Source of the DNA: Macrostomum lignano
Taxonomy: Eukaryota
Direction of reading: 5' to 3'
Length of the DNA stretch: 37,480 nt
Assembly (NCBI GenBank): GCA_002269645.1
Contig: NIVC01004704.1
Span: 1-37,480, forward strand
Each line of letters starts with the position of its first letter. The stretch's first letter is position 1. The position numbers and the translations under genes were made by a program. A model generated the notes under the pieces. It was not told the origin of the DNA. It worked only from the letters and a program-made list of their open reading frames with translations, and searched no databases. Below, piece by piece: positions 2,359-35,136 of this stretch.

Positions 2359-2403
2359 GTAAGCTGAGCCTTGGGCAGTGCTGCCTGCCATTCGTTCGTA
2401 ATC

Positions 2404-3918
2404 GCACAAAGATTCTCTCTGATAGTTCTCAGATAGTGTGGAATGGCAAACAAAGACTCACTCTGATAGTTCTCAGATAGTGTGGAATGGCACACAAAGA
2501 CTCACTCTGATAGTTCTCAGATAGTGTGGAATGGCACACAAAGACTCAGTCTGATAGTTCTCAGATAGTGTGGAATGGCACACAAAGACTCAGTCTGATA
2601 GTTCTCAGATAGTGTGGAATGGTACACAAGGACTCAGTCTGATAGTTCTCAGATAGTGTGGAATGGCACACAAAGACTCAGTCTGATAGTTCTCAGATAG
2701 TGTGGAATGGCAAGCAAAGACTCACTCTGATAGTTCTCAGATAGTGTGGAATGGCACACAAAGACTCACTCTGATAGTTCTCAGATAGTGTGGAATGGCA
2801 CACAAAGACTCACTCTGATAGTTCTCAGATAGTGTGGAATGGCACACAAAGACTCAGTCTGATAGTTCTCAGACAGTGTGGAATGGCACACAAAGACTCA
2901 CTCTGATAGTTCTCAGATAGTGTGGAATGGCAAACAAAGACTCACTCTGATAGTTCTCAGATAGTGTGGAATGGCAAGCAAAGACTCACTCTGATAGTTC
3001 TCAGATAGTGTGGAATGGCAAGCAAAGACTCACTCTGATAGTTCTCAGATAGTGTGGAATGGCACACAAAGACTCACTCTGATAGTTCTCAGATAGTGTG
3101 GAATGGCACACAAAGACTCAGTCTGATAGTTCTCAGATAGTGTGGAATGGCACACAAAGACTCACTCTGATAGTTCTCAGATAGTGTGGAATGGCACACA
3201 AAGACTCACTCTGATAGTTCTCAGACAGTGTGGAATGGCACACAAAGACTCACTCTGATAGTTCTCAGACAGTGTGGAATGGCAAACAAAGACTCACTCT
3301 GATAGTTCTCAGACAGTGTGGAATGGCAAACAAAGACTCACTCTGATAGTTCTCAGACAGTGTGGAATGGCACACAAAGACTCAGTCTGATAGTTCTCAG
3401 ATAGTGTGGAATGGCACACAAAGACTCACTCTGATAGTTCTCAGACAGTGTGGAATGGCAAACAAAGACTCACTCTGATAGTTCTCAGATAGTGTGGAAT
3501 GGCACACAAAGACTCACTCTGATAGTTCTCAGACAGTGTGGAATGGCACACAAAGACTCACTCTGATAGTTCTCAGATAGTGTGGAATGGCAAACAAAGA
3601 CTCACTCTGATAGTTCTCAGATAGTGTGGAATGGCAAACAAAGACTCACTCTGATAGTTCTCAGATAGTGTGGAATGGCACACAAAGACTCAGTCTGATA
3701 GTTCTCAGATAGTGTGGAATGGCACACAAAGACTCAGTCTGATAGTTCTCAGATAGTGTGGAATGGCACACAAAGACTCAGTCTGATAGTTCTCAGATAG
3801 TGTGGAATGGCACACAAAGACTCAGTCTGATAGTTCTCAGATAGTGTGGAATGGCACACAAAGACTCTCTCTGATAGTTCTCAGATAGTGTGGAATGGCA
3901 CACAAAGACTCTCTCTGA
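2404..3918. repeat. Minisatellite, 44-bp unit CTGATAGTTCTCAGATAGTGTGGAATGGCACACAAAGACTCACT, about 34 copies
   Basis: Near-identical units differing at about three positions; lies in the putative intron 2359-4555. Confidence 0.97.
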
Positions 3919-4555
3919 AAAAACGGGTTAGAATTGCATGACAAAGACTCATAGATTTGAGAGTGGGATCAGAGGGTGTCTGATATTTTGGTTTTAACAT
4001 GAACAAGGAAGTGATGTACACTGCACGAGTGACCCCTTAGTGATTCTAGCATTTCTGCACCTTCAAAGCTTTTAATTATTTAAGTGCCTGAACGCCTAAT
4101 TTATAGCACATTCTCTGTCATGTGCAGATGCTAGCGTGGTAGTTTTTAGTAATCGATGTTTTTTAATTCTTGCATTTGCATTGACATTTTGTAGTGATAA
4201 TTATTAATAACGTTTCACTAAAACAGCTATTGAAGCTAAAAAAGAGATGCATCGGTATTAACTAAAGCCTAAAGTTATCAAATGCTTAACCGCACGAACT
4301 TCTGAATAGTTTTTTCCCGCTCGCCGTGTGCCGATGCTGCATTGTTCTGACTCCAAGTAATATTTGATTGTATTTATTCTCAAAAATGTTACATATTTTA
4401 AATAGCAATTTTCGTAACATTCTACTCATTGGCTTTTAATAAGTAAAGCGTATTGCTTGCTTAAATATTTTTTGTTTTAAAAGAAAGCATATATTGCTAC
4501 TAATGTTTATTCAGTAGCGTATCGAGAATATTTTCTTTGAACTCTCTGCCACTAG

Positions 4556-4759
4556 ATGGGCACGCTTAACACGGGCGACGAGGCGCAGATACCCGACGAC
4601 TTCTCGGCTGAGCAGCTTCGCTCCGGACAAGCATTGAACATGCTTTTCAGCGGCGGCCTTGCTGGCGCGCTGTCTCGCACCTGCACCGCTCCGTTGGACC
4701 GCTTGAAAGTATTGCGTCAAGTTTACGGATATCAGCACGCTGGCTCTTCCGCTATCAAG
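4556..4759 (+). CDS. SLC25A24: SCaMC-type mitochondrial ATP-Mg/Pi carrier, exon (MGTLNTGDEAQIPDDF...SRTCTAPLDRLKV...SSAIK)
   Basis: Acceptor TAG at 4553-4555 and donor AAG|GT at 4760. Contains GGLAGALSRTCTAPLDRLK, the first Px[DE]xx[KR] carrier signature. The vertebrate paralog (A23/A24/A25) cannot be resolved. Confidence 0.9.
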
Positions 4760-4800
4760 GTAGCTGATCCGGAATCTAGGGATTTGCTTATTTATTTATA

Positions 4801-5270
4801 TCCCTGTCTGGATTTCTTCTGATTACCCCACCTGAATTTCCCTTGATTTCCCCACCTAGAGTTCCCCTGATTACCCCACCTGGAGTTCCCCTGATACCCC
4901 ACCTGGATTTCCCTTGATTTCCCACCTGGATTCCCCTGATTACGATTTCCCTTTGATTTCCCTACCTGGATTTCCCTTGATTTCCTCACATGGATTTCCC
5001 CTGATTACCCCACTTGGATTTCCCTTGATTTCCTCACATGGATTTCCCCTGATTACCCCACCTGGATTTCCCCTGATTTCCCCACCTGGATTTCCCCTGA
5101 TTTCCCACCTGGATTCCCCTGATTTCCCACCTGGATTCCCCTGATTACCCCACCTGGATTTCCCTTGATTTCCCCACCTGGATTCCCCTAATTTTCCCAC
5201 CTGGAGTTCCCCTAATTTTCCCACCTGGAGTTCCCCTGTTTTTCCTACCTGGATTTCCCTGATTTCATCT
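4801..5270. repeat. Intronic minisatellite, ~23-bp unit CCCCACCTGGATTTCCCCTGATT
   Basis: Direct inspection; fills most of intron 4760-5333. Confidence 0.9.
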
Positions 5271-5333
5271 CCTGGCCTCTGCAATATTATGCTAAGTCTT
5301 TGTGCTAGCCCTTCTTCCAACCCTGCCCTCAAG

Positions 5334-5635
5334 GCCTTCCGCTGGATGCTGCAAGAAGGCGGTATCCGGTCGTTGTGGCGAGGCAATGGAGTCAACGTAA
5401 TAAAAATCGCCCCCGAGACGGCGATAAAGTACACGTTCTACGATTTCTATAAGCGCCTTTTGTTTGGCGGTCCGTCCGAACTGCAAATCCATCAGAAATT
5501 CCTAGCCGGCAGTCTGGCCGGGGCAACCAGTCAGACCATGATTTATCCTATGGAGGTGGCTAAGACCAGGATGTGCTTGAGGAAGACAGGCCAATATCCC
5601 GGCGGCCTGGTTGGCTGCCTCGCGTCCGTGTACAG
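5334..5635 (+). CDS. SLC25A24: SCaMC carrier exon ([28 protein letters not shown]...[10 protein letters not shown]...SVY)
   Basis: [21 protein letters not shown] is typical of SCaMC, and the second signature PMEVAKTR is present. Phase-0 acceptor (AAG 5331-5333) and phase-2 donor AG|GTTAGT at 5636. Confidence 0.9.
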
Positions 5636-6246
5636 GTTAGTTGTTGAATTGTGTACATGTTAGTTGTTGAATTGTGTACAGGTTAGTTGTTGAATTGTGT
5701 ACATGTTAGTTGTTGAATTGTGTACAGGTTAGTTGTTGAATTGTGTACAGGTTAGTTGTGTAACTGTGTACAGGTTAGTTGTTGAATTGTGTACATGTTA
5801 GTTGTGTAACTGTGTACAGGTTAGTTGTTGAATTGTGTACAGGTTAGTTGTGTAACTGTGTACAGGTTAGTTGTTGAATTGTGTACAGGTTAGTTGTTGA
5901 ACTGTGTACAGGTTAGATTTTGAATTGTGTACAGGTTTATTGTTGAACTGTGTACAGGTTTATTGTTGAACTGTGTACAGGTTAGTTTTTGAATTGTGTA
6001 CAGGTTAGATGTTGAACTGTGTACAGGTTAGTTTTTTAATTGTGTACAGGTTAGTTGTTGAACTGTGTACAGGTTAGTTTTTGAATTGTGTACAGGTTAG
6101 TTGTTGAACTGTGTACAGGTTAGTTGTTTAACTGTGTACAGGTTAGTTGTTTAACTGTGTGCAGGTTAGTTGTAACTGTGTACAGGTTAGTTGTTTAACT
6201 GTGTACAGGTTAGTTGTTTAACTGTGTACAAGGTTAGTTGTTGAAT
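5628..6246. repeat. Minisatellite, 23-bp unit GTGTACAG|GTTAGTTGTTGAATT, about 27 copies, overlapping the exon/intron junction
   Basis: The first unit includes the last 8 exonic nt and the real donor at 5636. Confidence 0.95.
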
Positions 6247-6310
6247 CGTTTATCGTTTGTCGCCAGTTCACTCAAACCAATCTTCCTTGCACTTCCTGAC
6301 GCCTCGGCAG

Positions 6311-6474
6311 AGAGGGTGGCACCCGCGCCCTGTTCCGCGGCTACACGATCAACCTGGCTGGCATTCTTCCCTACGCTGGCATCGAGCTGGCCGCCTACGA
6401 AACCACGCGGACCTGGCTGTTCCGCGACCTGCCCTCGCACGAAGCTCCCTCTGTGGCGGCTCTGCTGCTTTCAG
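6311..6474 (+). CDS. SLC25A24: SCaMC carrier exon (REGGTRALFRGYTINLAGILPYAGIELAAYET...LLLS)
   Basis: Not listed in the ORF track in this frame; translated by hand. Matches the SCaMC motif RGYxPNxLGIIPYAGIDLAVYE. CAG acceptor ends at 6310, phase-1 donor G|GTGCGT at 6475, and phases match both neighbours. Confidence 0.9.
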
Positions 6475-6509
6475 GTGCGTGACGAGGCTGGGCAGTGCGG
6501 TTGGGCGGT

Positions 6510-8548
6510 GGGAAAATTCTTTGGGATTTGAATTTGTGGAGGAGATTCTTTGGTATTCGAGTTTGTGGGGAGATTCTTTGGGATTCGAGTTTGTGGAGGA
6601 GATTCTTTGGGATTCAAATTTGGGGGAGATTCTTTGGGATTCGAGTTTGTGGGGGAGATTCAGTTTGTGTGGGGAGATACTTTGGGATTCGAGTTTGTGG
6701 GGGGAGATTGTTTGGTGCCTTGGTGGAGTTTGTGGGGAGATTCTTTGGGATTCGAGTTTGTGGAGGAGATTCTTTGGGATTCGAGTTTGGGGGGAGATTC
6801 TTTGGGATTCGAGTTTGTGGGGAGATTCTTTGGGATTCGAGTTTGGGGGGAGATTCTTTGGGATTCGAGTTTGGGGGGAGATTCTTTGGGATTCGAGTTT
6901 GTGGAGGAGATTCTTTGGTGCCTTGGTGGAGTTTGTGGGGAGATTCTTTGGGATTCGAGTTTGGGGGGAGATTCTTTGGGATTCGAGTTTGTGGAGGAGA
7001 TTCTTTGGGATTCGAGTTTGGGGGGAGATTCATTGGGATTCGAGTTTGGGGGGAGATTCTTTGGGATTCGAGTTTGGGGGAGATTCTTTGGGATTCGAGT
7101 TTGGGGGGAGATTCTTTGGGATTCGAGTTTGTGGAGGAGATTCTTTGGTGCCTTGGTGGAGTTTGTGGAGGAGATTCTTTGGGATTCGAGTTTGTGGGGA
7201 GATTCTTTGGTGCCTTGGTGGAGTTTGGGGGGAGATTCTTTGGGATTCGAGTTTGGGGGGAGATTCTTTGGGATTCGAGTTTGTGGGGAGATTCTTTGGG
7301 ATTCGAGTTTGGGGGGAGATTCTTTGGGATTCGAGTTTGTGGGGAGATTCTTTGGGGTTCGAGTTTGTGGGGAGATTCTTTGGGATTCGAGTTTGTGGAG
7401 GAGATTCTTTGGTGCCTTGGTGGAGTTTGTGGGGAGATTCTTTGGGATTCGAGTTTGTAGGGAGATTCATTGGGATTCGAGTTTGTGGGGAGATTCATTG
7501 GGATTCGAGTTTGTGGGGGATTCTTTGGGGTTCGAGTTTGTTTGTGTTTATTTGGGATTTGAGTTTGTTTGTGATTCTTTGGGATTCGAGTTTGTTGGGA
7601 GATTCTTTGGGATTCGAGTTTGAGGAGGAGATTCTTTAGGATTCGAGTTTGTTGGGAGATTCTTTGGGATTCGAGGTTTTTGGGAGATTCTTTGGGATTC
7701 GAGGTTTTTGGGAGATTCTTTAGGATTCGAGTTTGTTGGGAGATTCTTTGGGATTCGAGGTTTTTGGGAGATTCTTTAGGATTCGAGTTTGTTGGGAGAT
7801 TCTTTGGGATTCGAGGTTTTTGGGAGATTCTTTAGGATTCGAGTTTGTTGGGAGATTCTTTGGGATTTGAGGTTTTTGGGAGATTCTTTAGGATTCGAGT
7901 TTGTTGGGAGATTCTTTGGGATTCGAGGTTTTTGGGAGATTCTTTAGGATTCGAGTTTGTTGGGAGATTCTTTGGGATTCGAGGTTTTTGGGAGATTCTT
8001 TAGGATTCGAGTTTGTTGGGAGATTCTTTGGGATTCGAGGTTTTTGGGAGATTCTTTAGGATTCGAGTTTGTTGGGAGATTCTTTGGGATTCGAGGTTTT
8101 TGGGAGATTCTTTAGGATTCGAGTTTGTTGGGAGATTCTTTGGGATTCGAGGTTTTTGGGAGATTCTTTAGGATTCGAGTTTGTTGGGAGATTCTTTGGG
8201 ATTCGAGGTTTTTGGGAGATTCTTTAGGATTCGAGTTTGTTAGGAGATTCTTTGGGATTCGAGGTTTTTGGGAGATTCTTTAGGATTCGAGTTTGTTGGG
8301 AGATTCTTTGGGATTCGAGGTTTTTGGGAGATTCTTTAGGATTCGAGTTTGTTGGGAGATTCTTTGGGATTCGAGGTTGTTGGGAGATTCTTTAGGATTC
8401 GAGTTTGTTGGGAGATTCTTTGGGATTCGAGGTTGTTGGGAGATTCTTTAGGATTCGAGTTTGTGGGGAGATTCTTTGGGATTCGAGTTTGTGGGGAGAT
8501 TCATTGGGATTCGAGTTTGTTGGGAGATTCTTTGAGATTCGAGTTTTT
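6510..8548. repeat. Intronic minisatellite, 28-bp unit GGAGATTCTTTGGGATTCGAGTTTGTGG, with a 56-bp dimeric sub-array
   Basis: Fills nearly all of intron 6475-8579. Confidence 0.96.
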
Positions 8549-8579
8549 TGAGTCTATAAATTTCCCAATTAAATTTTAG

Positions 8580-8854
8580 GTGCCCTGGCCTCCTCAATCG
8601 GCATCGTGGCCTGCTACCCGCTGGCCTTGCTGCGCACCAAGATGCAGTCCAAGGTGCAGTTCAGCAGGCCGGAGCTCAACACTGTCAGAGGCCTGGCCGC
8701 CACGGTGTACCAAGCCGAAGGCATTGTTGGATTCTACCGCGGCATGGGCGCCAACCTGGTCAAGGTGCTGCCCTCGGTGGCTATCAGCTTTGCCACATTC
8801 GAGCGAATCAATCATTACTTTGACATCGCGCACCCGTTCGGGCGGACCTCGTAG
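8580..8854 (+). CDS. SLC25A24: SCaMC carrier terminal exon (GALASSIGIVACYPLALLRTKMQ...FYRGMGANLVKVLPSVAISF...stop)
   Basis: The degenerate third signature YPLALLRTKMQ is characteristic of SCaMC (YPLALVRTRMQ). TAG acceptor at 8577-8579 and stop ending at 8854. Confidence 0.9.
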
Positions 8855-8999
8855 CCTCGGGTTGACTGTTTCCTTGGGTTTTGGGTCGGGTAGGGGCTGG
8901 TTGTAGGGATCTTTTCATGGCTGCCGGTTTCTTTCGCTGTCTTTACTAAGAGTGCATTTTCACACAGAGATCAAGTTGATGTAAACGTCATCCACCCTG

Positions 9000-9748
9000 A
9001 TCCTCAGTTGCGGGACCAGCCTCCCCGATCCTGTTGCTGGGCGACCCTCTCAGATCCTCATTTGCTGGGTCAGTCTCCCAGATCCTCAGTTGCTGGGCCA
9101 GTCTCCCAGAGTGTCAGTAGCTGGGCCAGCCTCCCAGAGTGTCAGTAGCTGGGCCAGTCTCCCAGAGTGTCAGTAGCTGGGCCAGTCTCCCAGAGTGTCA
9201 GTAGCTGGGACAGCCTCCCAGATCCTCAGTTGCTGGGCCAGCCCCCCAGTTCCTCAGTTGCTGGGACAGCCTCCCAGATCCTCAGTTGCTGGGACAGCCT
9301 CCCAGATCCTCAGTTGCTGGGCCAGCCTCCCAGATCCTCAGTTGCTGGGCCAGCCCCCCAGTTCCTCAGTTGCTGGGACAGCCTCCCAGATCCTCAGTTG
9401 CTGGGACAGCCCCCAGTTCCTCAGTTGCTGGGCCAGCCCCCCAGTTCCTCAGTTGCTGGGACAGCCTCCCAGATCCTCAGTTGCTGGGACAGCCTCCCAG
9501 ATCCTCAGTTGCTGGGCCAGCCTCCCAGATCCTCAGTTGCTGGGCCAGCCCCCCAGTTCCTCAGTTGCTGGGACAGCCTCCCAGATCCTCAGTTGCTGGG
9601 ACAGCCTTCCAGATCCTCAGTTGCTGGGCCAGCCTCCCAGATCCTCAGTTGCTGGGCCAGCCTCCCAGATCCTCAGTTGCTGGGCCAGCCTCCCAAATCC
9701 TCAGTTGCTGGGATACCCTCTCAAATCCTCAGTTGCTGGGCCAGCGCT
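9000..9748. repeat. Minisatellite, 28-bp unit CAGCCTCCCAGATCCTCAGTTGCTGGG(C/A), downstream of the SCaMC stop
   Basis: Direct inspection. Confidence 0.93.
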
Positions 9749-12136: not shown

Positions 12137-12302
12137 ATGGCTGGGAAGGTTGTTAAGCAGTTAGCTGGCAGTGGTAGCGGGCAAAGCCTTATGGATCGGG
12201 TTACTGCTGCAAAACACTCTCTTGCTGGATCAGGACTTGCAAAAGCCGTTTGCAAAGCAACCACAGAAGAAATCACGGCCCCAAAGAAGAAACACTTACA
12301 GT
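12137..12302 (+). CDS. PICALM: PICALM/AP180 exon 1 (ANTH domain start)
   Basis: [41 protein letters not shown] matches the PICALM/SNAP91 N-terminus. Phase-1 donor T|GTAAGT at 12303. Confidence 0.95.
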
Positions 12303-12667
12303 GTAAGTTGTTTGTCTTTGACATGTAGATGGTTAGGCCTATCATTTTATTTCTTTATTATGAGGCTTATTAAGCTTTCTTAATTCTACTGCCTTGCTGA
12401 GGCTGGCTCCCTAGCCCAAAGTGTATTTCATAGTAGTCATGCACTACTTTATTCATATTTTAATTATTTTTTACTTCTGGTTCCATACGTATTATATATA
12501 TGTAAGTTAAAAGATTAGGTGTTAGGCCTAGACTTTGCACTATATATGATAATTGACTATTGATATTAACAATACTCTGTCTATTATTTTAAATGAATAC
12601 AAACACAAAGTCCTAAATATTAGACTTATTGATTTTTTAACTAGGCTTAACTACTTTTCTTTTGATA

Positions 12668-19216: not shown

Positions 19217-19234
19217 GTGAGTGCCGTTGGATCC

Positions 19235-26372: not shown

Positions 26373-26996
26373 CCCCTAACCAATTCCTATTGGCTGTTTG
26401 AATTCCATACCGCAGTCACTACTCTACCCCTAACCAATTCCTATTGGCAGTTTGAATTCTATGCCGCAGTCACTGCTCTACCCCTAACCAATTCCTATTG
26501 GCTGTTTGAATTCTATACCGCAGTCACTACTCTACCCCTAACCAATTCCTATTGGCTGTTTGAATTCTATACCGCAGTCACTGCTCTACCCCTAACCAAT
26601 TCCTATTGGCTGCTTGAATTCTATGCCGCAGTCACTGCTCTACCCCTAACCAATTCCTATTGGCTGTTTGAATTCTATACCGCAGTCACTGCTCTACCCC
26701 TAACCAATTCCTATTGGCTGTTTGAATTCTATACCGCAGTCACTGCTCTACCCCTAACCAATTCCTATTGGCTGTTTGAATTCTATGCCGCAGTCACTGC
26801 TCTACCCCTAACCAATTCCTATTGGCTGTTTGAATTCCATACCGCAGTCACTACTCTACCCCTAACCAATTCCTATTGGCTGTTTGAATTCCATACCACA
26901 GTCACTACTCTACCCCTAACCAATTCCTATTGGCTGTTAGAATTTCATACCGCAGTCACTGCTCTACCCCTAACCAATTCCTATTGGCTGTTTGAA
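26373..26996. repeat. Intergenic minisatellite, 54-bp unit CCCCTAACCAATTCCTATTGGCTGTTTGAATTCTATACCGCAGTCACTGCTCTA, about 11.5 copies
   Basis: Direct inspection; degenerate partial copies at about 27052 and 27128. Confidence 0.96.
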
Positions 26997-27505: not shown

Positions 27506-27905
27506 ATGAGCTATCGGGCGTCGCTGAACCTGCCCAAATTTGCCATCCCGGTTAGGCGGCCGGCTCGCAGTCCGAGCACGCCGAGCGGCTGCGTCGTCTA
27601 TGGGCCGAGGCCTACGCCTGGCAGCTGAGAGATGGGCGGCCGCGCCAAGTTTTCAGCCTGCACGACGGCCCGCCCTACGCCAACGGTAAGCCGCACGTTG
27701 GACACGCGCTCAACAAGGTGTTGAAGGACTCAGTGAGTCGCTACCAGCTTTTGCGCGGCCGGCAGGTTCGGTTTCGGCTAGGCTGGGACTGTCACGGGCT
27801 GCCAATCGAGCTCAAAGCGAAGCCGACTCAGTCAGCTGCTGGAAGCGATTCTGCCGAACCTGCTGCTGATTGTTCGCCAGCCAATCAGATTCGTCAAAGG
27901 GCAAG
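27506..27905 (+). CDS. IARS2: Mitochondrial-type IleRS exon 1 ([11 protein letters not shown]...[frameshift]...[20 protein letters not shown]...[10 protein letters not shown])
   Basis: HIGH motif (HVGH), HDGPPYANG and [10 protein letters not shown] are present. The N-terminal YRASLNLPK lies in a different frame, with the shift at about 27551-27570. Phase-2 donor AG|GTTAGC at 27906. Confidence 0.85.
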
Positions 27906-28596
27906 GTTAGCTCAGCGACGAAAGTGATATTGGTTGTGTATCTCATCACTGAGTATCTCTAGGGAGTAATCTACGCTCCGAAATCTCCTTATTTTTTACC
28001 TAGCTTTTGGTAGTCAGATTTCCCTTGAATTGAATTACATGTGCGGAAGAAAGACAGTACGCTTAGACGATAAAAATGATTAACTGTCAAAGTGATTCAA
28101 TACTTTGGGACGCCACTTGTACAACTTAGGATAATGAATAAGCTTTACACACATGTATGTACGCGAGCGAGTCCAAGACAACAGTAGAAACAGCAGCTAT
28201 TCAACAAGAACAAAAATGACAACCCAACAATCACAACACCAACAATGACGAAAACAACAATAAGGGGGTTGTCTGGAAGTGAGAATTCATGGTAATGGCC
28301 ATAGATACTAGTGACTATGGCTATATCGTGTCTATGGCCATTACAAACCATATTTTCTCACTTCCAGCTAACTTTATTGGTCAATTTGTCCACCAGGATC
28401 CGAGTGGGAAAGGGGAGTGGGGGGTGTGGGCGCGAAGCCCCACTTACAACCATAGACTATTTTATTTTACGCTCATGGACTCGTTCGTTTTCTAAAATGA
28501 TATCCCGGTAAATTGCTCTATTGTCAATTTCAAAAAATGACCGGTCGTTGCTTGAATGTCATTGCCTTAACGTAAATTACCATAGACATTTTGAAC

Positions 28597-28750
28597 AATC
28601 ACAACATTAACAATCACAGCACCAACAATCACAACACCAACACTGGCAACAAACCAACAGTAACAACAACCCAACAGTAACAACAATCACAACACCAACA
28701 ATTACAACACCATCACAACACCAACAATCACAACACCAACAATTACAACT
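28597..28750. repeat. Degenerate ACAATCACAACACCA-type repeat
   Basis: Direct inspection; IARS2 intron 1. Confidence 0.75.
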
Positions 28751-28760
28751 TCGGTGAAAA

Positions 28761-29775
28761 GGGTGAGATTCGGGGAGAAGTATAGAGGTGAGATTCGGGG
28801 AGAAGTGTAGGGTGAGATTAGGTGAAGAGTAGGGGTGAGATTCGGAGAAGTTTAGGGGTGAGATTCGGAGAAGTGTAGGGGTGAGATTCGGTGAAGAGTA
28901 GGGGTGAGATTCGGAGAAGTGTAGGGGTGAGATTCGGAGAAGTGTAGGGGTGAGATTCGGGGAAGTGTAGGGGTGAGATTCGGGGAAGAGTAGGGGTGAG
29001 ATTCGGGAAGAGTAGGGGTGAGATTCGGAGAAGTGTAGGGGTGAGATTCAGTGAAGAGTAGGGGTGAGATTCGGGGAAGTGTAGGGGTGAGATTCGGGAA
29101 GTGTAGGGGTGAGATTCGGTGAAGTGTAGGGGTGAGATTCGGGGAAGTGTAGGGGTGAGATTCGGTGAAGAGTAGGGGTGAGATTCGGAGAAGTGTAGGG
29201 GTGAGATTCGGAGAAGTGTAGGGGTGAGATTCGGGAAGTGTAGGGGTGAGATTCGGTGAAGAGTAGGGGTGAGATTCGGAGAAGTGTAGGGGTGAGATTC
29301 GGAGAAGTGTAGGGGTGAGATTCGGGGAAGTGTAGGGGTGAGATTCGGGAAGAGTAGGGGTGAGATTCGTGGAAGAGTAGGGGTGAGATTCGGAGAAGTG
29401 TAGGGGTGAGATTCAGTGAAGAGTAGGGGTGAGATTCGGGGAAGTGTAGGGGTGAGATTCGGGGAAGTGTAGGGGTGAGATTCGGGGAAGTGTAGGGGTG
29501 AGATTCGAGGAAGTGTAGGGGTGAGATTCGGTGAAGAGTAGGGGTGAGATTCGGAGAAGTGTAGGGGTGAGATTCAGTGAAGAGTAGGGGTGAGATTCGG
29601 AGAAGTGTAGGGGTGAGATTCGGGGAAGTGTAGGGGTGAGATTCGGGGAAGTGTAGGGTGAGATTCGGGGAAGTGTAGGGGTGAGATTCGGGAAGTGTAG
29701 GGGTGAGATTCGGGGAAGAGTAGGGGTGAGATTCGGGGAAGAGTAGGGGTGAGATTCGGGGAGAAGTGTAGGGGT
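28761..29775. repeat. Intronic minisatellite, 23/24-bp unit GGGGTGAGATTCGG(A/G)GAAGTGTA
   Basis: Direct inspection; IARS2 intron 1. Confidence 0.95.
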
Positions 29776-29909
29776 GCCATGTACACCGTGCGCTCAGGGG
29801 CACTGCTTGCCTGTTCTGTGGGCCTTGATCTGCGGCAGTGCCAAAGCCCTCCGCTAACTGAACTAACAATTAACAAACGGATCTCACCTCGGTCTGCTCA
29901 CCCACCCAG

Positions 29910-30390
29910 AGCATTCGCTGACCAGTGCATCGCAGAGCAACGGTTGGCATTTCAGCACTGGGGCGTCCTCAGCGCGTCAGCTGAGCACTACGAGACCAAA
30001 TCGCCCGGCTACGTGGCCCGTCAGCTGCTGGCGTTCGACCGGCTGCACAGTCTCGGACTGGTCTATCGCAGCTTCCTGCCCGTCCACTGGTCGGACAGTT
30101 CGGCCACTGCGCTGGCCGAGGCGGAGCTCGTGTATCGGGACGATCACCGGTCGGACAGCGCCTTCGTCCTGATGCCGCTGATTCGGCTGTCCGCCGACGC
30201 GTCGGCGCCTGAGGCTCTGAGAGACTCGGGAGGGGAGCAGCAGCCGCGGCATCACCTGCTGGTTTGGACCACCACGCCGTGGACTCTGCCGGCCAACGCC
30301 GCTGTCGCTGTGGGCCCCGGCATGCGCTACTCGCTGCGCCGTCTGCCAGACGGTCGGACCGTTGTTGTCGCAGCCAGCTGGCCCGGCTTC

Positions 30391-30424
<34 letters not shown>

Positions 30425-30501
30425 GCGTCGAGCTCGGAGAACCGCTGGCCGAGTTCCCTGCCGATGCGCTGATTGGGGCGACCTACCGGCATCCGTTCAG
30501 T
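29910..30501 (+). CDS. IARS2: IARS2 exon 2 (AFADQCI...LVYRSFLPVHWS..SATALAEAEL...VWTTTPWTLPAN...YRHPFS)
   Basis: IleRS motifs including WTTTPWTLPAN of the CP1 editing domain. CAG acceptor ends at 29909 and donor GTGGGT is at 30502. Confidence 0.9.
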
Positions 30502-30517
30502 GTGGGTTCCGGGTGGC

Positions 30518-30945
30518 AAGGCTATGGGACAGTGTGGGAAGGCTATGGGACAGTGTGGGAAGGCTATGGGACAGTGTTGGAAGGCTATGGGACAGTGTGG
30601 GAAGGCTATGGGACAGTGTGGGAAGGCTATGGGACAGTGTTGGAAGGCTATGGGACAGTGTGGGAAGGCTATGGGACAGTGTGGGAAGGCTATGGGACAG
30701 TGTGGGAAGGCTATGGGTCAGTGTGGGAAGGCTATGGGACAGTGTGGGAAGGCTATGGGTCAGTGTGGGAAGGCTATGGGACAGTGTGGGAAGGCTATGG
30801 GACAGTGTGGGAAGGCTATGGGTCAGTGTGGGAAGGCTATTGGGCAGTGTGGGAAGGCTATGGGACAGTGTGGGAAGGCTATGGGACAGTGTGGGAAGGC
30901 TATGGGACAGTGTGGGAAGGCTATGGGGCAATATGGAAAGGCCTG
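30518..30945. repeat. Minisatellite, 21-bp unit GGCTATGGGACAGTGTGGGAA, about 20 copies, in IARS2 intron 2 (reads GYGTVWE in frame)
   Basis: Direct inspection; interrupts the CP1 domain between HPFS and NAECPVL. Confidence 0.95.
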
Positions 30946-31002
30946 GGTCGATATCCTAATTCCTGCTGGCCATTAATCGCCAGGCCCCTCTTGAACCCGC
31001 AG

Positions 31003-31516
31003 AACGCGGAGTGCCCGGTGCTGCCATCGGATCACGTGACCGAGGACAAGGGCACCGGCCTGGTGCACGTGGCCCCCGCGCACGGCCGCGAGGATTTTCA
31101 ACTTGGCATCAAATTCAAACTTCCCCTCGTCTCCATGGTAACGGAGGCCGGCCGGTTCGGCGGCCCCGGCCTGTCCGAATCGCTGGAGGAGCTGAACGGC
31201 CGGCACTGCCTGACGGAGGGGTCCGGGGCCGTGCTGGACCTGCTGCGCCGGCGCAGCCTCCTGGCGCACACGGAGGCGCTGGTGCACAGCTACCCCTACG
31301 ACTGGCGCACCGGCCGCCCTGTGATGCTGCGCGCCTCCAGCCAGTGGTTTCTGGACACTGCCGGCCTGCGCGACCGGGCACTAACCGCTCTGGACACTGT
31401 CCGAATTCTGCCGGACAGGGAGGCCGGCGCTATGCGGGCTTTCGTGGCCGCCCGGCCCTACTGGTGCATCAGCCGGCAGCGGGTGCACGGAGTGCCGATC
31501 CCAGTGCTGTACGACG
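31003..31516 (+). CDS. IARS2: IARS2 exon 3 (NAECPVLPSDHVT..GTGLVHVAPAHG...HSYPYDWRT..P...WCISRQRVHGVPIPV)
   Basis: GTGLVHxAPAHG, HSYPxDWR and WCISRQR motifs. Donor G|GTGCGC at 31517. Confidence 0.9.
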
Positions 31517-31574
31517 GTGCGCTGGGGGTTTGGGATAGCCGAGGTTGCCAAGTTCTGCGAACCGATTCCTTTTA

Positions 31575-32277
31575 ATCCCATCTCATCTAATCCCTTCTGA
31601 CTCCATCTAATCCCATCGCACTCCATCTAATCTCAACCCACTCCATCTAATCTCATCCCACTCCATCTAATCTCATCCCACTCCATCTAATCCTATCCCA
31701 TTCCATCTAATCCTATCCCACTCCATCTGATCCTATCCCATTACATCGAATCCTATCCCATTCCATCTAATCCAATCCCATTACATCGAATCCTATCCCA
31801 TTCCATCGAATCCAATCCCATTCCATCTAATCCCATCCCATTCCATCTGATCCCATCCCATTCCATCTAATCCTATCCCATTACATCTAATCCCATCCCA
31901 TTCCATCTAATCCCATCCCATTCCATCTAATCCTATCCCATTACATCTAATCCCATCCCACTCCATCTAATCCAATCCCATTACATCGAATCCTATCCCA
32001 TTCCATCTAATCCTATCCCATTCCATCTAATCCTATCCCACTCCATCTAATCCTATCCCATTCCATCTGATCCTATCCCATTCCATCTGATCCTATCCCA
32101 TTCCATCTGATCCTATCCCATTCCATCTAATCCCATCCCATTCCATCTAATCCTATCCCATTCCATCTAATCCTATCCCATTACATCTGATCCCATCCCA
32201 ACCATCTAGTTCCATTTCAACATCTCAATCGCCTCCCACTTCGTCTAATCCCATTCCAATCCATCTAATCTCATCCC
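31575..32277. repeat. Intronic minisatellite, 20-bp unit ATCCTATCCCATTCCATCTA
   Basis: Fills IARS2 intron 3. Confidence 0.93.
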
Positions 32278-32298
32278 CGCGATATCCAACTTTCCCAG

Positions 32299-32723
32299 AG
32301 TCCACCGGCGACCCCGTCTACGACAGTCAGCTGACTCGCCGCTTCGCCGAGCACGTCGCCGAGACCGGCAGCGCCGACTCCTGGTTCGAACTCTCGGCCG
32401 ATCAACTCGCCGAAAAATTCGGCAGCTCCGAGCTGCGCCATCGACGCTTGAAGAAATCTGGCGACATCTTCGACATCTGGATGGACAGCGGCCTCTCCTG
32501 GGCGGTGGCCGGCGAGGCGGGCGACCTGGACGCTGACGGTCAGGCGTCGCTGTGCGTCGAAGGTCAGGACCAGTTCCGCGGCTGGTTCTCCAGCTCGCTG
32601 CTGCTCTCGGTGGCTCTGACTGGCCGGCCGCCTTACAAGAGCCTGGCTGTGCACGGCTTCACTGTGGACGAGACCGGCAGGAAGATGTCCAAGTCTGTTG
32701 GCAACGTGGTGGACCCGGAACAG
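32299..32723 (+). CDS. IARS2: IARS2 exon 4 (DIFDIWMDSG...EGQDQFRGWFSS...HGFTVDETGRKMSKSVGNVVDPEQ)
   Basis: Class I KMSKS motif and EGxDQxRGWF. The phase-1 acceptor and phase-0 donor are consistent with both neighbours. Confidence 0.92.
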
Positions 32724-32834
32724 GTGGGGACATGGGAGCGGGGGGTTGAGGGTGTGGGATGCTTTCACAACACCTGTCGTCTTGTCACAAGACGTGATAA
32801 GATAATCAAAAGGTTCGAGTGATTCGAAAAGGCA

Positions 32835-33030
32835 GTGTGAGATTAGACAAGGGAGGGTGAGATTAGAAAAAAGGATAAGATTAGAAAATTAAGGGGTGAG
32901 ATTAGAAAACTGGGTGAGATTAGAAAACTGAGTGAGATTAGAAAACTGGGTGAGATTAGAAAACTGAGTGAGATTATAAAAGGAGAGTGAGATTAGAAGA
33001 AAAGGGAGGGTGAGATTAGAAAAGGGAGGG
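32835..33030. repeat. Short 18-bp GTGAGATTAGAAAACTG(G/A) repeat
   Basis: Direct inspection; IARS2 intron 4. Confidence 0.8.
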
Positions 33031-33059
33031 TGAAATTCAGGGAACGGCCAGGAGAGATT

Positions 33060-34235
33060 GGAGACGGGCAGGGGAGGGTGGAGGCACGGTCAGGGGAGGG
33101 TGGAGGCACGGTCAGGGGAGGATGGAGACACGGTCAGGGGAGGATGGAGACACGGTCAGGGGAGGGTGGAGACACGGGCAGGGGAGGGTGGAGACACGGG
33201 CAGGGGAGGGTGGAGACACGGGCAGGGGAGGGTGGAGACACGGGCAGGGGAGGGTGGAGACACGGGCAGGGGAGGGTGGAGACACGGGCAGGGGAGGGTG
33301 GAGACACGGGCAGGGGAGGGTGGAGACACGGGCAGGGGAGGGTGGAGACACGGGCAGGGGAGGGTGGAGACACGGGCAGGTGAGGATGGAGACACGGGCA
33401 GGGGAGGATGGAGACACGGGCAGGGGAGGGTGGAGACACGGGCAGGGGAGGATGGAGACACGGGCAGGGGAGGGTGGAGACACGGGCAGGGGAGGGTGGA
33501 GACACGGGCAGGGGAGGATGGAGACACGGGCAGGGGAGGGTGGAGACACGGGCAGGGGAGGGTGGAGACACGGGCAGGGGAGGGTGGAGACACGGGCAGG
33601 TGAGGATGGAGACACGGGCAGGTGAGGATGGAGACACGGGCAGGGGAGGGTGGAGACACGGGCAGGGGAGGATGGAGACACGGGCAGGGGAGGATGGAGA
33701 CACGGGCAGGGGAGGGTGGAGACACGGGCAGGGGAGGGTGGAGACACGGGCAGGGAGGGTGGAGGCACGGTCAGGGGAGGATGGAGACACGGTCAGGGGA
33801 GGATGGAGACACGGGCAGGGGAGGGTGGAGACACGGGCAGGGGAGGGTGGAGACACGGGCAGGGGAGGGTGGAGACACGGGCAGGTGAGGATGGAGACAC
33901 GGGCAGGGGAGGGTGGAGACACGGGCAGGTGAGGATGGAGACACGGGCAGGGGAGGGTGGAGACACGGCAGGGGAGGGTGAGGCACGGTCAGGGGAGGAT
34001 GGAGACACGGTCAGGGGAGGATGGAGACACGGGCAGGGGAGGATGGAGACACGGGCAGGGGAGGTGGAGACACGGGCAGGGAGGGTGGAGGCACGGGCAG
34101 GGGAGGGTGGAGACACGGGCAGGGGAGGGTGGAGGCACGGTCAGGGGAGGATGGAGACACGGGCAGGGAGGATGGAGACACGGTCAGGGGAGGATGGAGA
34201 CACGGGCAGGGAGGGTGGAGACATGGGCAGGGGAA
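33060..34235. repeat. G-rich intronic minisatellite, 22-bp unit GGAGACACGGGCAGGGGAGGGT
   Basis: Direct inspection; IARS2 intron 4. Confidence 0.96.
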
Positions 34236-34597
34236 GATGTGATCTTGCATAAATAGCTGATAGCTAAGAAGGCTTAGTTTTTAGGAGAAAGGGATTTGTT
34301 TGTTTTCCCTTTGTGTTTCCAGCCTCCGACAGCGCAAGTTTTCTGTTTCAAAAGAATAAGTCTCTCTTTTGAGCCCGCCTTTTTTCATTTCCCGTCTTCC
34401 TTTTTAGGTGCGGAATCCCGCGTTTGTGCCTTGTGTCTATCATTTCGAGTGTCTGCAAAATCTCCTTTGGCGCTTCAGTGCTTTTTGAAAGCTTTTTTCT
34501 ATTTCCGTTTTGACTGAATTCAATTAATTTTTTTCGAATCTCTTCCTAAAAGCATCTTTAAGTAATTCTTCATCATTCTACTGAATAATTCGGGATC

Positions 34598-35112
34598 CCA
34601 ATATCCGCCCGGTCATCTACCTCACAGTCTACCCCAATATCCGCCCGGTCATCTACCTCACAGTCTACCCCAATATCCGCCCGGTCATCTACCCCACTGT
34701 TTACCCAATATCCGCCCGGTCATCTACCCCACTGTCTACCCCAATATCCGCCCGGTCATCTACCTCACAGTCTACCCCATTATCCGCCCGGTTATCTACC
34801 TCACAGTTTACCCCAATATCCGCCCGGTCATCTACCTCACAGTCTACCCCAATATCCGCCCGGTCATCTACCTCACAGTCTACCCCAATATCCGCCCGGT
34901 CATCTACCCCACTGTCTACCCAATATCCGCCCGGTCATCTACCCCACTGTCTACCCCAATATCCGCCCGGTTATCTACCCCATTGTCTACCCCAATATCC
35001 AGCTGGTCATCTACCCCATTGTCTACCCCAATATCCAGCCGGTCATCTACCCACTGTCTACCCCAGTGTCTCTGTATCCGGGTCATCTACCCCTGTCTAC
35101 CCCAATATCCCC
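34598..35112. repeat. Intronic minisatellite, ~36-bp unit CCAATATCCGCCCGGTCATCTACCTCACAGTCTACC
   Basis: Direct inspection; ends about 25 nt before the acceptor at 35136. Confidence 0.93.
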
Positions 35113-35136
35113 CACACCGTCCAACCCACTGCCCAG

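What the first reader, a model, noticed from the sequence alone, without database searches (positions are those of the whole stretch)
2359..35136. Introns inflated by private, locally born minisatellites (one intron, one unit)
Seen: 12 of 14 modelled introns in three unrelated genes contain a tandem array, and every array has a different 15-44 bp unit. Subtracting the array leaves tiny stubs: 5636-6310 leaves about 64 nt, 6475-8579 about 66, 30502-31002 about 73, 31517-32298 about 79, 4760-5333 about 104, and 17409-18582 about 128. In these six introns the arrays begin 0-85 nt after the donor and stop about 20-65 nt before the acceptor, sparing the branch point and pyrimidine tract. Inference: short ancestral introns were expanded up to about 30-fold by in-situ amplification of a piece of their own sequence, not by TE insertion. 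That points to a genome-wide, probably transcription- or repair-linked, minisatellite-birth process that sets intron size. About 44% of the window is such arrays.
Basis: partly seen in the sequence, partly recalled or inferred. Interest (0 to 1): 0.8.

Follow-up and report, generated by a model that had tools for sequence, protein, structure and literature searches.

The report
Private minisatellites filling flatworm introns
In this contig of the flatworm Macrostomum lignano, almost every intron of three ordinary genes is mostly filled by its own unrelated tandem repeat array; these look like ordinary minisatellites, at least some demonstrably born on the spot, at unusual density.

Summary
The window is a whole 37,480-bp contig of Macrostomum lignano. 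It carries three same-strand genes: a SCaMC-type mitochondrial carrier, an ANTH/PICALM-type adaptor and an isoleucyl-tRNA synthetase. Twenty-two tandem arrays (units 14-54 bp, 117-2,039 bp long) cover 44.9% of it; shuffled sequence gives about 0. Twelve of 14 GT-AG introns hold arrays, and six shrink to 65-148 nt once the array is subtracted.

Corrections:
- Four introns hold two or three unrelated arrays, so "one intron, one unit" is not strict.
Positions 1-4555 all lie inside one 4.8-kb carrier intron.
- Three arrays lie outside introns.

- Local birth is shown for two arrays, whose units repeat their own exon-end plus donor 18 times, like amphioxus "mirage" minisatellites. For the others it is inferred: units are unrelated, there are no shared flanks and no transposon ends.
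- A second genomic copy, 0.48% diverged, carries the same arrays. Six of eight differ by whole units, so they behave as slow VNTRs older than that split.
- Arrays are not intron-specific. A transposon-laden intergenic stretch is 38% arrays, and one MULE transposon carries arrays in its terminal repeats.
- A transcription- or repair-linked, genome-wide process remains untested.

This is a dense new example of a known kind.

The parts
7..892 (+). Array of a 21-bp unit (CTGAATGTGGATTGTCACTGA), 42.7 copies, cut off by the contig start. Lies in carrier intron 3.
   Evidence: TRF. The same array is complete in L009 18941-20014. The window copy has 3 extra units (63 bp).
1429..1907 (+). Array of an 18-bp C-rich unit, 26 copies. 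Lies in carrier intron 3.
   Evidence: TRF. Same length in L009 apart from 1-2 bp gaps.
2405..3918 (+). Array of a 44-bp unit, 34.4 copies, 97% matches. Lies in carrier intron 3.
   Evidence: TRF. L009 has one unit fewer (44 bp).
4808..5266 (+). Array of a 24-bp C-rich unit in carrier intron 4760-5333. The rest of the intron is 115 nt.
   Evidence: Identical in L009 (459 bp, 0 mismatches).
5628..6245 (+). 'Mirage'-type array of a 23-bp unit. It begins 8 nt inside the exon, so each unit is the exon end plus the donor (GTGTACAG|GTTAGT...). Carrier intron 5636-6310; the rest of the intron is 65 nt.
   Evidence: the 14-mer junction is present 18 times. Use of any of the four downstream copies tested (copies 1-4) gives premature stops. 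The window has one more unit than L009.
6508..8546 (+). Array of a 28-bp G/T-rich unit, 72 copies, in carrier intron 6475-8579. The rest of the intron is 66 nt, so the intron is about 32 times that length.
   Evidence: Three separate whole-unit indels against L009 (57, 28 and 141 bp).
8995..9745 (+). Array of a 28-bp unit, 140 nt after the carrier stop codon. Probably in the 3'UTR.
   Evidence: No AATAAA/ATTAAA between the stop and the array; the first is at 9902. L009 has 3 more units.
17491..18539 (+). Array in ANTH intron 17409-18582. A 33-bp unit gives way to a derived 21-bp unit. The rest of the intron is 125 nt.
   Evidence: One-unit difference against L009.
19235..20294 (+). Array of a 21-bp unit, 50.7 copies, starting 18 nt after the donor of ANTH intron 19217-20720.
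20310..20426 (+). Short second array (14/38-bp unit) in the same ANTH intron.
21357..21917 (+). Array of a 22-bp G/T-rich unit; the first of two arrays in ANTH intron 21114-23383.
22362..23225 (+). Array of a 23-bp C-rich unit; the second, unrelated array in ANTH intron 21114-23383.
23661..24436 (+). Complex array (22/31/61/85-bp periods) in ANTH intron 23548-24648.
26373..26996 (+). Array of a 54-bp unit, 11.6 copies, about 500 nt upstream of the IARS start codon. Not in a coding-region intron.
28594..28749 (+). Degenerate 15-bp array in IARS intron 27906-29909.
28761..29776 (+). Array of a 23-bp G-rich unit (GGGTGAGATTCGGGGAAGTGTAG), 44 copies, in IARS intron 27906-29909.
   Evidence: Reproduced in L001.
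30513..30942 (+). Array of a 21-bp unit in IARS intron 30502-31002. The rest of the intron is 71 nt. The unit boundary repeats the authentic junction CAGT|GTGGG.
   Evidence: the junction 9-mer is present 18 times (the authentic junction at 30498 plus 17 copies in the array). The longest match to any non-adjacent junction is 7 nt.
31575..32208 (+). Array of a 20-bp C/T-rich unit in IARS intron 31517-32298. Degenerate copies run on towards the acceptor.
32821..33037 (+). Array of an 18-bp unit; the first of three unrelated arrays in IARS intron 32724-35136.
33064..34234 (+). Array of a 22-bp G-rich unit (ACGGGCAGGGGAGGGTGGAGAC), 53.5 copies; the second array in IARS intron 32724-35136.
   Evidence: G-quadruplex motif over 56% of it.
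34597..35110 (+). Array of a 36-bp C-rich unit; the third array in IARS intron 32724-35136. It ends 26 nt before the acceptor.
36218..36793 (+). Array of a 32-bp unit starting 5 nt after the IARS stop codon. Probably in the 3'UTR, or an alternative 3' intron.
   Evidence: the first AATAAA is at 36903. The older gene model P0002 splices across it.
4556..8854 (+). Last four coding exons of a SCaMC-type (SLC25A23/24-like) mitochondrial carrier: 4556-4759, 5334-5635, 6311-6474, 8580-8854. The EF-hand exons lie beyond the contig start.
   Evidence: Exact match to PAA46784.1. Full-length paralogue P0112.
12161..24735 (+). ANTH-domain clathrin adaptor (PICALM/AP180-like). Exons: 12161-12302, 17098-17408, 18583-19216, 20721-20825, 21024-21113, 23384-23547, 24649-24735.
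27506..36213 (+). Isoleucyl-tRNA synthetase gene. Exons: 27506-27905, 29910-30501, 31003-31516, 32299-32723, 35137-36213.

Best explanation
The arrays are ordinary minisatellites (VNTRs). They arose in place in non-coding DNA of Macrostomum lignano and have grown to fill most of the length of introns that were originally short.

Proposed mechanism, with each step marked as shown or inferred.
1. A short tandem duplication of 14-54 bp of local sequence founds an array. This is shown for two arrays whose unit is their own exon-end plus splice donor. It is inferred for the rest.
2. The array then gains and loses whole units by out-of-register pairing, either slippage during replication or repair, or unequal sister-chromatid or allelic exchange. 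Whole-unit changes are shown by the differences between two genomic copies. The pairing mechanism itself is inferred.
3. Change is slow and stepwise, about one event per array at 0.5% sequence divergence. The arrays are therefore long-lived rather than hypermutable.
4. Arrays persist wherever they do no harm. They are absent from exons, and they stop short of the donor (with the exceptions noted under evidence against) and of the last 26 nt or more before the acceptor. This pattern is what purifying selection on splicing signals would produce (inferred).

In this gene-dense stretch, introns make up most of the DNA that tolerates arrays, so the arrays set intron length. I see no need for an intron-specific or transcription-coupled process.
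For: Anatomy.
- There are 22 arrays with units of 14-54 bp, and units match their consensus at 86-98%.
- Adjacent units are more alike than distant ones in 17 of the 19 arrays measured. Four arrays show a dimeric higher-order structure. In one array a 33-bp unit gives rise to a 21-bp derivative.

Privacy.
- 30 array units sampled over about 65 kb of M. lignano DNA (the window plus the extra parts of L001 and L009) are mutually unrelated. The exceptions are that sub-array pair and one transposon-borne pair.
- With the arrays masked, no array flank resembles any other.

Local origin.
- Array 5628-6245 starts 8 nt inside the coding exon and repeats the junction 14-mer 18 times.
- The IARS intron-2 junction 9-mer occurs 18 times, once at the authentic junction (30498) and 17 times within array 30513-30942. 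The longest match to any non-adjacent junction is 7 nt for this array and 9 nt for 5628-6245.

VNTR behaviour.
- L009 is colinear with window 1-18265 and differs by 48 substitutions in 9,955 bp of unique DNA (0.48%).
- All eight shared arrays are present with the same unit.
- Six of the eight differ by indels of 63 (3x21), 44, 23, 57/28/141 (28-mer), 83 (28-mer) and 33 bp. That is nine whole-unit events in about 7.5 kb.
- Array substitution divergence is 0.43%.

Reality of the arrays: L001 reproduces seven arrays with only 1-bp homopolymer differences.

Tolerance pattern: 0 of 22 arrays lie in 5.5 kb of exons (p = 0.001).

No intron specificity.
- Arrays cover 27% of the window's non-intron flanks.
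- They cover 38% of a transposon-laden intergenic 10 kb in L009.

Published genome-wide figures that fit.
- Tandem repeats make up 13.1% of the M. lignano genome (PMC5730564 and its Supplementary Table 4).
- Mean intron length is 1,114 nt, against 558 and 692 nt in two congeners (PMC10468722).
- Spacers between genes in operons collapse to about 100 bp once repeats are subtracted (PMC8629364).
Against: - Direct evidence of local birth exists for only 2 of the 19 intronic arrays.
- No progenitor single copy could be shown for any array. Both available genomic copies already carry all the arrays.
- Arrays are somewhat denser in introns than in flanks. Nineteen against three, scaled by non-array target size, gives p of about 0.02-0.03. 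Two of the three non-intron arrays probably lie in 3'UTRs. A bias towards transcribed DNA is therefore not excluded.
- The copy-number distribution is top-heavy. Only 3 arrays with period of at least 14 have 2-8 copies, against 19 with 10 or more. A steady birth-and-slow-growth process does not predict this. It fits better with a past burst, or with growth that speeds up with array length.
- The AT-rich 7.4 kb (9746-17097), including a transcribed intron, has no array. This is unexplained.
- Two arrays sit very close to the donor or contain it (11 nt away, and -8 nt), so selection does not keep the donor region strictly clear.
Confidence: 0.72

Rival explanations
1. A targeted process. Minisatellite birth or expansion in M. 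lignano is coupled to transcription, splicing or transcription-associated repair, so transcribed non-coding DNA (introns, UTRs, outrons) is hit preferentially. This is essentially the first reader's inference.
For: - 19 of 22 arrays lie in introns.
- Two of the other three probably lie in 3'UTRs, since there is no poly(A) signal before them.
- Intron enrichment over flanks gives p of about 0.02-0.03.
- Every array but one (2405-3918) has a strong strand asymmetry, with GC skew of 0.2-0.9 in absolute value.
- Two arrays are built from splice-donor junctions.
- There is a weak trend for G-rich arrays to lie near donors and C-rich arrays near acceptors (rho = -0.41).
Against: - The trend with position is not significant (p = 0.10, n = 17).
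- The transcribed 4.8-kb ANTH intron 1 has no array.
- A transposon-laden intergenic 10 kb upstream of the paralogue is 38% arrays.
- G-quadruplex-type motifs, a plausible link to transcription-associated instability, occur in only 9 of 22 arrays.
- The sample is one locus.
Confidence: 0.2
2. The arrays were brought in from elsewhere. They would be members of dispersed satellite families or internal repeats of transposons that inserted into introns.
For: - M. lignano does have such arrays. A MULE transposon in carrier intron 1 (L009 13930-18190; ORF with FLYWCH and MULE domains) carries the same 14-bp array in both of its roughly 480-bp terminal inverted repeats.
- Transposons are active at this locus. 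An intact Merlin-like element and a 792-bp insertion polymorphism are present.
Against: - None of the window's 22 arrays shares a unit with another array.
- None has flanks resembling those of another array.
- Six introns leave only 65-148 nt besides the array, including the splice signals.
- Two arrays contain host exon sequence.
- Only about 65 kb of the 760-Mb genome could be searched for further copies.
Confidence: 0.05
3. The arrays are kept by selection because they do something, for example regulate splicing or set a required intron length.
For: - Arrays persist at similar length in two copies.
- Intronic minisatellites have been linked to splicing choices in C. elegans (CeRep25B, PMC4039745).
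Against: - Each array has a different sequence, so there is no shared motif that a factor could read.
- Copy number drifts by whole units between copies.
- Units within arrays have diverged by 2-14%.
- The same kind of array occurs in intergenic DNA.
- No Rfam family or tRNA was found in the window.
Confidence: 0.03

Closest known systems
Amphioxus 'mirage' minisatellites (Adh3 and globin genes; described in PMC3087553, which cites the original Adh3 work)
   Same: - Tandem duplications whose unit spans an exon-intron boundary and so multiplies a splice signal.
- Units of 10-72 bp at Adh3.
- Length variation between haplotypes.
- Array 5628-6245, and less cleanly 30513-30942, are of this type.
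   Different: - Only 2 of the 19 intronic arrays here include junction sequence.
- Here the phenomenon affects nearly every intron of three unrelated genes, whereas in amphioxus it is described at a handful of loci.
- Somatic instability, reported for amphioxus, could not be tested.
Classical minisatellites / VNTRs (own knowledge: the Jeffreys-type human loci)
   Same: - Head-to-tail units of 10-100 bp and arrays of 0.1-2 kb.
- Strand asymmetry in G and C content.
- Internal variant units.
- Whole-unit length differences between copies.
   Different: - Density is far higher: 45% of a gene-rich contig.
- The arrays are interstitial and intragenic rather than clustered near chromosome ends.
- The apparent rate of change is modest, about one unit-level event per array at 0.5% divergence, unlike hypervariable human loci (the human rates are from my own knowledge).
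Repeat-inflated operon spacers in M. lignano (Ustyantsev and Berezikov 2021, PMC8629364)
   Same: - Same organism and same logic. [quoted passage not shown]
- The authors read this as neutral accumulation of repeats in short non-coding spacers.
   Different: - That work concerns intergenic spacers and lumps simple repeats with transposons.
- It does not describe introns, private units or junction-derived arrays.
CeRep25B and other intronic minisatellites of C. elegans (PMC4039745)
   Same: Minisatellites of about 20-24 bp, 75% of which lie in introns.
   Different: CeRep25B is one dispersed family found in clusters on particular chromosomes. Here every array has its own unit.
Introners (intron-generating transposon-like elements; own knowledge)
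   Same: Both account for bulk intron sequence through repeat biology.
   Different: Introners are near-identical sequences at many genes and create new introns. Here the introns share no sequence, and I infer that the arrays expanded existing introns.

Membership tests
Minisatellite / VNTR | Head-to-tail tandem repeats with a unit of about 10-100 bp | tested here: met
   TRF periods are 14-54 bp with 3-72 copies in 22 arrays. Shuffled controls give about 0.
Minisatellite / VNTR | Copy number varies between alleles or copies in whole-unit steps | tested here: met
   Window against L009 (0.48% diverged): 6 of 8 arrays differ, and every indel of 3 bp or more is within 1 bp of a multiple of the unit length.
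Minisatellite / VNTR | Internal variant units, with local homogenisation | tested here: met
   Units are 86-98% identical to their consensus. Adjacent units are more alike than distant ones in 17 of the 19 arrays measured. Four arrays show dimeric higher-order repeats.
Minisatellite / VNTR | High germline or somatic mutation rate (hypervariability) | not testable with these tools
   Only two genomic copies are available. About one event per array at 0.5% divergence suggests a modest rate (inference).
'Mirage' minisatellite (amphioxus) | The repeat unit spans an exon-intron boundary | tested here: met
   Met for 5628-6245 (8 exonic nt plus the donor, 18 copies). Met for 30513-30942 in the sense that 4 exonic plus 5 intronic nt recur, 18 occurrences in all counting the authentic junction at 30498. 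Not met for the other 17 intronic arrays.
'Mirage' minisatellite (amphioxus) | The authentic site is still used and regular splicing is not disturbed | tested here: inconclusive
   The deposited proteins PAA46784.1 and PAA50295.1 correspond to use of the first donor copy. Use of any of the four downstream copies tested gives stop codons. No RNA data could be examined.
Transposon-borne or dispersed satellite family | The same unit occurs at unlinked loci | tested here: not met
   No unit recurs within about 65 kb, apart from the 14-mer in the two terminal repeats of one MULE in L009. The whole genome could not be searched.
Transposon-borne or dispersed satellite family | Arrays flanked by conserved element sequence, terminal inverted repeats or target-site duplications | tested here: not met
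   Self-comparison with arrays masked finds no similarity between array flanks. Stubs of 65-71 nt consist of splice signals.
Introner-type intron-generating element | Near-identical intron sequences in many genes | tested here: not met
   No similarity among the 14 introns once the arrays are masked, and no shared units.
Microsatellite / STR | Unit of 1-6 bp | tested here: not met
   Units are 14-54 bp. The only short-unit runs are coding (CGG)12 and (CAG)6-8 tracts.

The most novel reading that the evidence does not exclude
M. lignano (or its close lineage) underwent, or is still undergoing, a genome-wide wave of new minisatellite births that favours transcribed non-coding DNA. Under this reading the wave accounts for most of the twofold difference in mean intron length from its congeners. 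It also routinely multiplies splice donors into arrays of decoys that the spliceosome must ignore. If true, the species would be a natural system for studying how minisatellites are born, and how the correct splice site is chosen among up to 18 identical tandem copies.
Probability: 0.3. Interest if true: 0.7.

Novelty: new member of a known kind. Interest (0 to 1): 0.42.

Why it matters
If the pattern holds genome-wide, it would give a concrete cause for two published but unexplained figures. One is that 13% of the M. lignano genome is tandem repeats. The other is that its introns are about twice as long as those of its sister species.

The cause would be intron-size evolution driven mainly by locally born tandem arrays rather than by transposons.

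The junction-derived arrays are useful in their own right. One gene carries 18 exact tandem copies of its exon-end plus donor yet is annotated as spliced at the first copy. That makes a clean natural test of 5' splice-site choice and of how much nonsense-mediated-decay load is tolerated.

There is also a practical consequence. The arrays explain why this genome is hard to assemble and annotate. They matter for designing transgenes and guide RNAs in a regeneration model organism.

Tried and rejected
Look-ups that failed.
- The transposase ORF is not on record, so it could not be used to fetch more M. lignano DNA.
The paralogous contig was reached instead through the listing of cluster members and P0112.
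- The first genome paper (Wasik et al. 2015) is not held. What I say about it rests on my own knowledge, and I do not rely on it.

Protein searches.
- They found no orthologue from another Macrostomum species.
- The nearest ANTH relatives (56% identity; L002-L008, organism unknown) have an intron of about 63-84 nt near the position of ANTH intron 2. The position is not clearly identical and the organism is too distant, so I give this no weight.

Ideas tested and dropped.
- Position-dependent composition (G-rich arrays near donors, C-rich near acceptors): rho = -0.41, p = 0.10, not significant.
- G-quadruplex motifs as a common cause: present in only 9 of 22 arrays.
- A shared core motif. The best unrelated pair (22362 and 33064, both containing GGGCAGG) has p = 0.01 among 253 comparisons. 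GGGTGAGATT, shared by 28761 and 32821, has p = 0.015. Both are within chance.
- Junction-derived sequence at acceptors: none found.

Other negatives.
- Rfam and tRNA scans found nothing.
- Literature searches found no paper describing private intronic minisatellites in Macrostomum.

Full report
WHAT THE WINDOW IS

The last IARS exon is 100% identical to a Macrostomum lignano protein. My four-exon model of the carrier gene equals the deposited protein PAA46784.1 residue for residue. That protein sits on a contig of exactly 37,480 bp. The window is therefore one whole contig of the Mlig_3_7 assembly (GCA_002269645.1).

It carries three genes, all on the + strand.
- The last four coding exons of a SCaMC-type (SLC25A23/24-like) mitochondrial carrier.
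- A seven-exon ANTH-domain clathrin adaptor of the PICALM/AP180 type. My model is in frame over 510 codons.
- A five-exon isoleucyl-tRNA synthetase.

CHECKING THE OBSERVATION

Tandem Repeats Finder reports 64 rows, which merge into 22 arrays of at least 100 bp. Units are 14-54 bp. Merged coverage is 16,833 bp, or 44.9%. Ten dinucleotide-preserving shuffles gave 0-32 bp.

All 14 introns are GT-AG, and 12 contain at least one large array. The exception is 31517-32298, where degenerate copies run past the TRF boundary.

The arrays are real. An overlapping contig (L001) matches window 28723-37480 at 99.2%. Nearly all differences are 1-bp G or C homopolymer indels, and no array differs in copy number.

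- Four introns hold two or three unrelated arrays, so 'one intron, one unit' is not strict.
- Three arrays lie outside coding-region introns (8995-9745, 26373-26996, 36218-36793). Two of them start 140 nt and 5 nt after a stop codon with no poly(A) signal in between, so they are probably in 3'UTRs.

A SECOND GENOMIC COPY

The carrier protein's 90% cluster holds a 496-residue M. lignano protein with EF-hands (P0112) on another contig. Its locus, L009, is colinear with window 1-18265. In unique DNA it differs by 48 substitutions in 9,955 bp, or 0.48%. I cannot tell whether the two are haplotypes or recent duplicates. The assembly is known to contain 180 Mb of duplicated blocks at least 95% identical (PMC5730564).

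Reassembling P0112 from L009 gives seven exons. It also shows that window 1-4555 lies entirely inside carrier intron 3. That intron is 4,790 nt long, GTGAGT...TAG, and holds three unrelated arrays. The arrays at 7-892 and 1429-1907 are therefore intronic as well.

All eight arrays shared by the two copies have the same unit at the same place. Six differ in length. Every indel of 3 bp or more is within 1 bp of a multiple of the unit: 63 = 3x21, 44, 23, 57/28/141 in the 28-mer, 83 in the other 28-mer, and 33. That makes nine unit-level events in about 7.5 kb of arrays. Array substitution divergence is 0.43%, the same as in unique DNA.

Three conclusions follow. The arrays behave as VNTRs. They are older than the split between the two copies. 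They change slowly, by small steps.

IS EACH UNIT PRIVATE, AND WAS IT BORN LOCALLY?

Among 253 unit pairs in the window, only the two sub-arrays of one intron are related. There a 33-bp unit has given rise to a 21-bp derivative. Adding eight units from the extra parts of L009 and L001 gives one further related pair (discussed below). No 16-mer of any unit has a meaningful match elsewhere in the roughly 46 kb scanned (the window plus the L001 extension). With the arrays masked, array flanks share no similarity. Stubs of 65-71 nt leave no room for transposon ends.

Two arrays give direct evidence of local origin.
- Array 5628-6245 begins 8 nt inside the coding exon. The 14-mer GTGTACAG|GTTAGT, exon end plus donor, occurs 18 times. 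Use of any of the four downstream copies tested gives premature stop codons.
- The 9-mer CAGT|GTGGG occurs 18 times: once at the authentic IARS intron-2 junction (30498) and 17 times within array 30513-30942. The longest match of that array to any non-adjacent junction is 7 nt.

These two are the same kind of structure as the 'mirage' minisatellites of amphioxus (PMC3087553). For the other 17 intronic arrays, local birth is inferred, not shown.

ARE INTRONS SPECIAL?

Arrays make up 59% of intron DNA, or 73% without the transposon-filled ANTH intron 1. They make up 27% of the window's non-intron flanks and none of the exons, apart from the 8 nt at 5628. Scaled by non-array target size, 19 intronic arrays against 3 gives p of about 0.02-0.03. 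Zero arrays in exons gives p = 0.001.

Against intron specificity:
- The 10 kb upstream of the paralogue contains an integrase-like ORF and no evident host exons, and it is 38% arrays.
- The transcribed, AT-rich 4.8-kb ANTH intron 1 has no array at all.

One counter-example to privacy exists. In carrier intron 1 of L009, a MULE transposon (ORF with FLYWCH and MULE domains) has terminal inverted repeats of about 480 bp, 99% complementary. Each contains the same 14-bp tandem array. Some intronic arrays in this genome therefore do arrive with transposons.

MECHANISM

The best-supported account is the ordinary minisatellite life cycle. A short local tandem duplication founds the array. The array then gains and loses whole units through out-of-register pairing during replication, repair or unequal exchange. 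Several observations fit this.
- Adjacent units are more alike than distant ones in 17 of the 19 arrays measured.
- Four arrays have a dimeric higher-order structure.
- One array has evolved a shorter derived unit.

Arrays survive where they do not damage exons or core splice signals.

Other ideas did not hold up. Nearly all arrays have strong strand asymmetry. However, G-quadruplex motifs occur in only 9 of 22. The trend for G-rich arrays near donors and C-rich arrays near acceptors is not significant (rho = -0.41, p = 0.10).

One feature is not explained by steady birth and slow growth. Arrays are either absent or large. Only three with period of at least 14 have 2-8 copies, against 19 with 10 or more. 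That hints at a past burst or at growth that accelerates with length.

COMPARISON WITH WHAT IS KNOWN

Intronic minisatellites, including junction-spanning ones, are known from amphioxus. Dispersed intronic minisatellites are known from C. elegans.

For M. lignano itself the following has been published.
- Tandem repeats are 13.1% of the genome (PMC5730564 Supplementary Table 4).
- Mean intron length is 1,114 nt, against 558 and 692 nt in M. cliftonense and M. hystrix. The authors state that the nature of the repeats still needs detailed work (PMC10468722).
- Distances between genes in operons collapse to a peak of about 100 bp once repeats are subtracted, which was read as neutral accumulation (PMC8629364).

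I found no paper that describes private, intron-filling minisatellites or mirage-type arrays in Macrostomum. My search covers open-access literature only.

A rough consistency check, which is my own arithmetic on the published numbers: 13% of 764 Mb is about 100 Mb of tandem repeats. That is the same order as the extra intron length relative to the congeners. It also means that arrays cannot exceed about a third of all intron DNA genome-wide. This window, at 59%, is therefore richer than average.

VERDICT

The reading 'locally born, not brought by transposons' is right for at least two arrays and probable for the rest in this window. The extension to an intron-setting, transcription- or repair-linked, genome-wide process is not shown. 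It is partly contradicted by arrays in intergenic DNA and in transposon ends. I file this as a dense new example of a known kind (minisatellites, including mirage-type), of moderate interest. It comes with a clear set of genome-wide tests that were out of reach here.

Noticed in passing
window 13688-14892 (- strand ORF 13856-14827): An intact Merlin/IS1595-like DNA transposon inside ANTH intron 1. It is 1,205 bp long, with perfect 38-bp terminal inverted repeats, an 8-bp target-site duplication (TTTATTAT) and an uninterrupted 323-residue DDE transposase ORF (Pfam DDE_Tnp_IS1595, E = 3.6e-21). It looks recently active. It is also present in the second copy, L009.
   Followed up: yes
window 12665-13456; empty site at L009 about 31850-31860: A 792-bp AT-rich non-autonomous element, with inverted ends of 17-20 bp flanked by GATA on both sides. 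It is present in the window but absent from the otherwise colinear L009, which has a single GATA at that point. This is a transposon insertion polymorphism between two copies only 0.5% apart.
   Followed up: yes
L009 13930-18190: A MULE transposon in carrier intron 1, with an ORF at 15310-16749 (- strand) carrying FLYWCH zinc-finger and MULE transposase domains. Its terminal inverted repeats of about 480 bp are 99% complementary, and each contains a tandem array of the same 14-bp unit. It shows that some intronic tandem arrays in this genome are transposon-borne.
   Followed up: yes
window 1-4759; L009 10001-23839: The contig starts inside carrier intron 3. As a result the deposited 314-residue protein (PAA46784.1) is an N-terminally truncated model starting at an internal methionine. 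The full gene (P0112, 496 residues) has three upstream exons encoding EF-hands.
   Followed up: yes
window about 8834, about 27560-27580, 30017, 31073 and many sites within arrays: Single-base G or C homopolymer indels relative to the overlapping contigs. Several shift reading frames: the carrier C-terminus reads PFGRTS* in the window but RSGGPRSL...GWL* in L009, and IARS exons 1 and 2 are also affected. They look like long-read consensus errors rather than real differences.
   Followed up: partly
window 12150-12302: The first ANTH coding exon has the conserved SGQSL...KATTEE sequence but no in-frame ATG upstream of it. An acceptor-like CAG at 12158-12160 is in frame. The M. lignano spliced leader ends in ATG (PMC8629364), so the start codon may be supplied by trans-splicing.
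   Followed up: partly
window 9746-17097: A 7.4-kb AT-rich block (27-38% GC) covers the ANTH promoter, exon 1 and intron 1. It contains transposons but not one minisatellite, in sharp contrast to the rest of the contig.
   Followed up: partly
window 37152-37472; L001 about 14090-14460 and about 14970-15320: A dispersed repeat of about 320 bp at the contig end. Two further copies, 79-90% identical and in opposite orientations, lie about 5.5 kb downstream in the overlapping contig. Possibly a foldback or MITE-like element.
   Followed up: no
whole window: The copy-number distribution is top-heavy. Only 3 tandem repeats with period of at least 14 have 2-8 copies, against 19 with 10 or more. Newly born arrays are rare.
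   Followed up: partly
window 22362-23225 and 33064-34234: Two otherwise unrelated arrays, read on opposite strands, share ACCCTCCCCT/GGGCAGG-type motifs that recall the G-rich core of human minisatellites (own knowledge). Statistically this is within chance (p = 0.01 among 253 pairs).
   Followed up: partly
window 30390-30427, 20729-20752, 21077-21094, 24645-24690: Coding trinucleotide or 12-mer repeats: (CGG)12 encoding a poly-glycine run in IARS, and CAG and CCAGCCGCCGCC runs encoding poly-Q and PAA repeats in the ANTH C-terminal region.
   Followed up: no
window 36187-36839: An older gene model (UniRef A0A1I8IVB0, P0002) splices across the array that follows the IARS stop codon and adds a different C-terminus. 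The newer model (PAA47983.1) stops at 36211-36213. Whether this array is a 3'UTR or an optional intron is open.
   Followed up: no
L009 3256-4671 and 5185-6150: Upstream of the carrier paralogue lie an integrase-core-like ORF (probably a retrotransposon remnant) and an ORF with a J-domain-like motif. They sit among six more arrays with yet other units.
   Followed up: no
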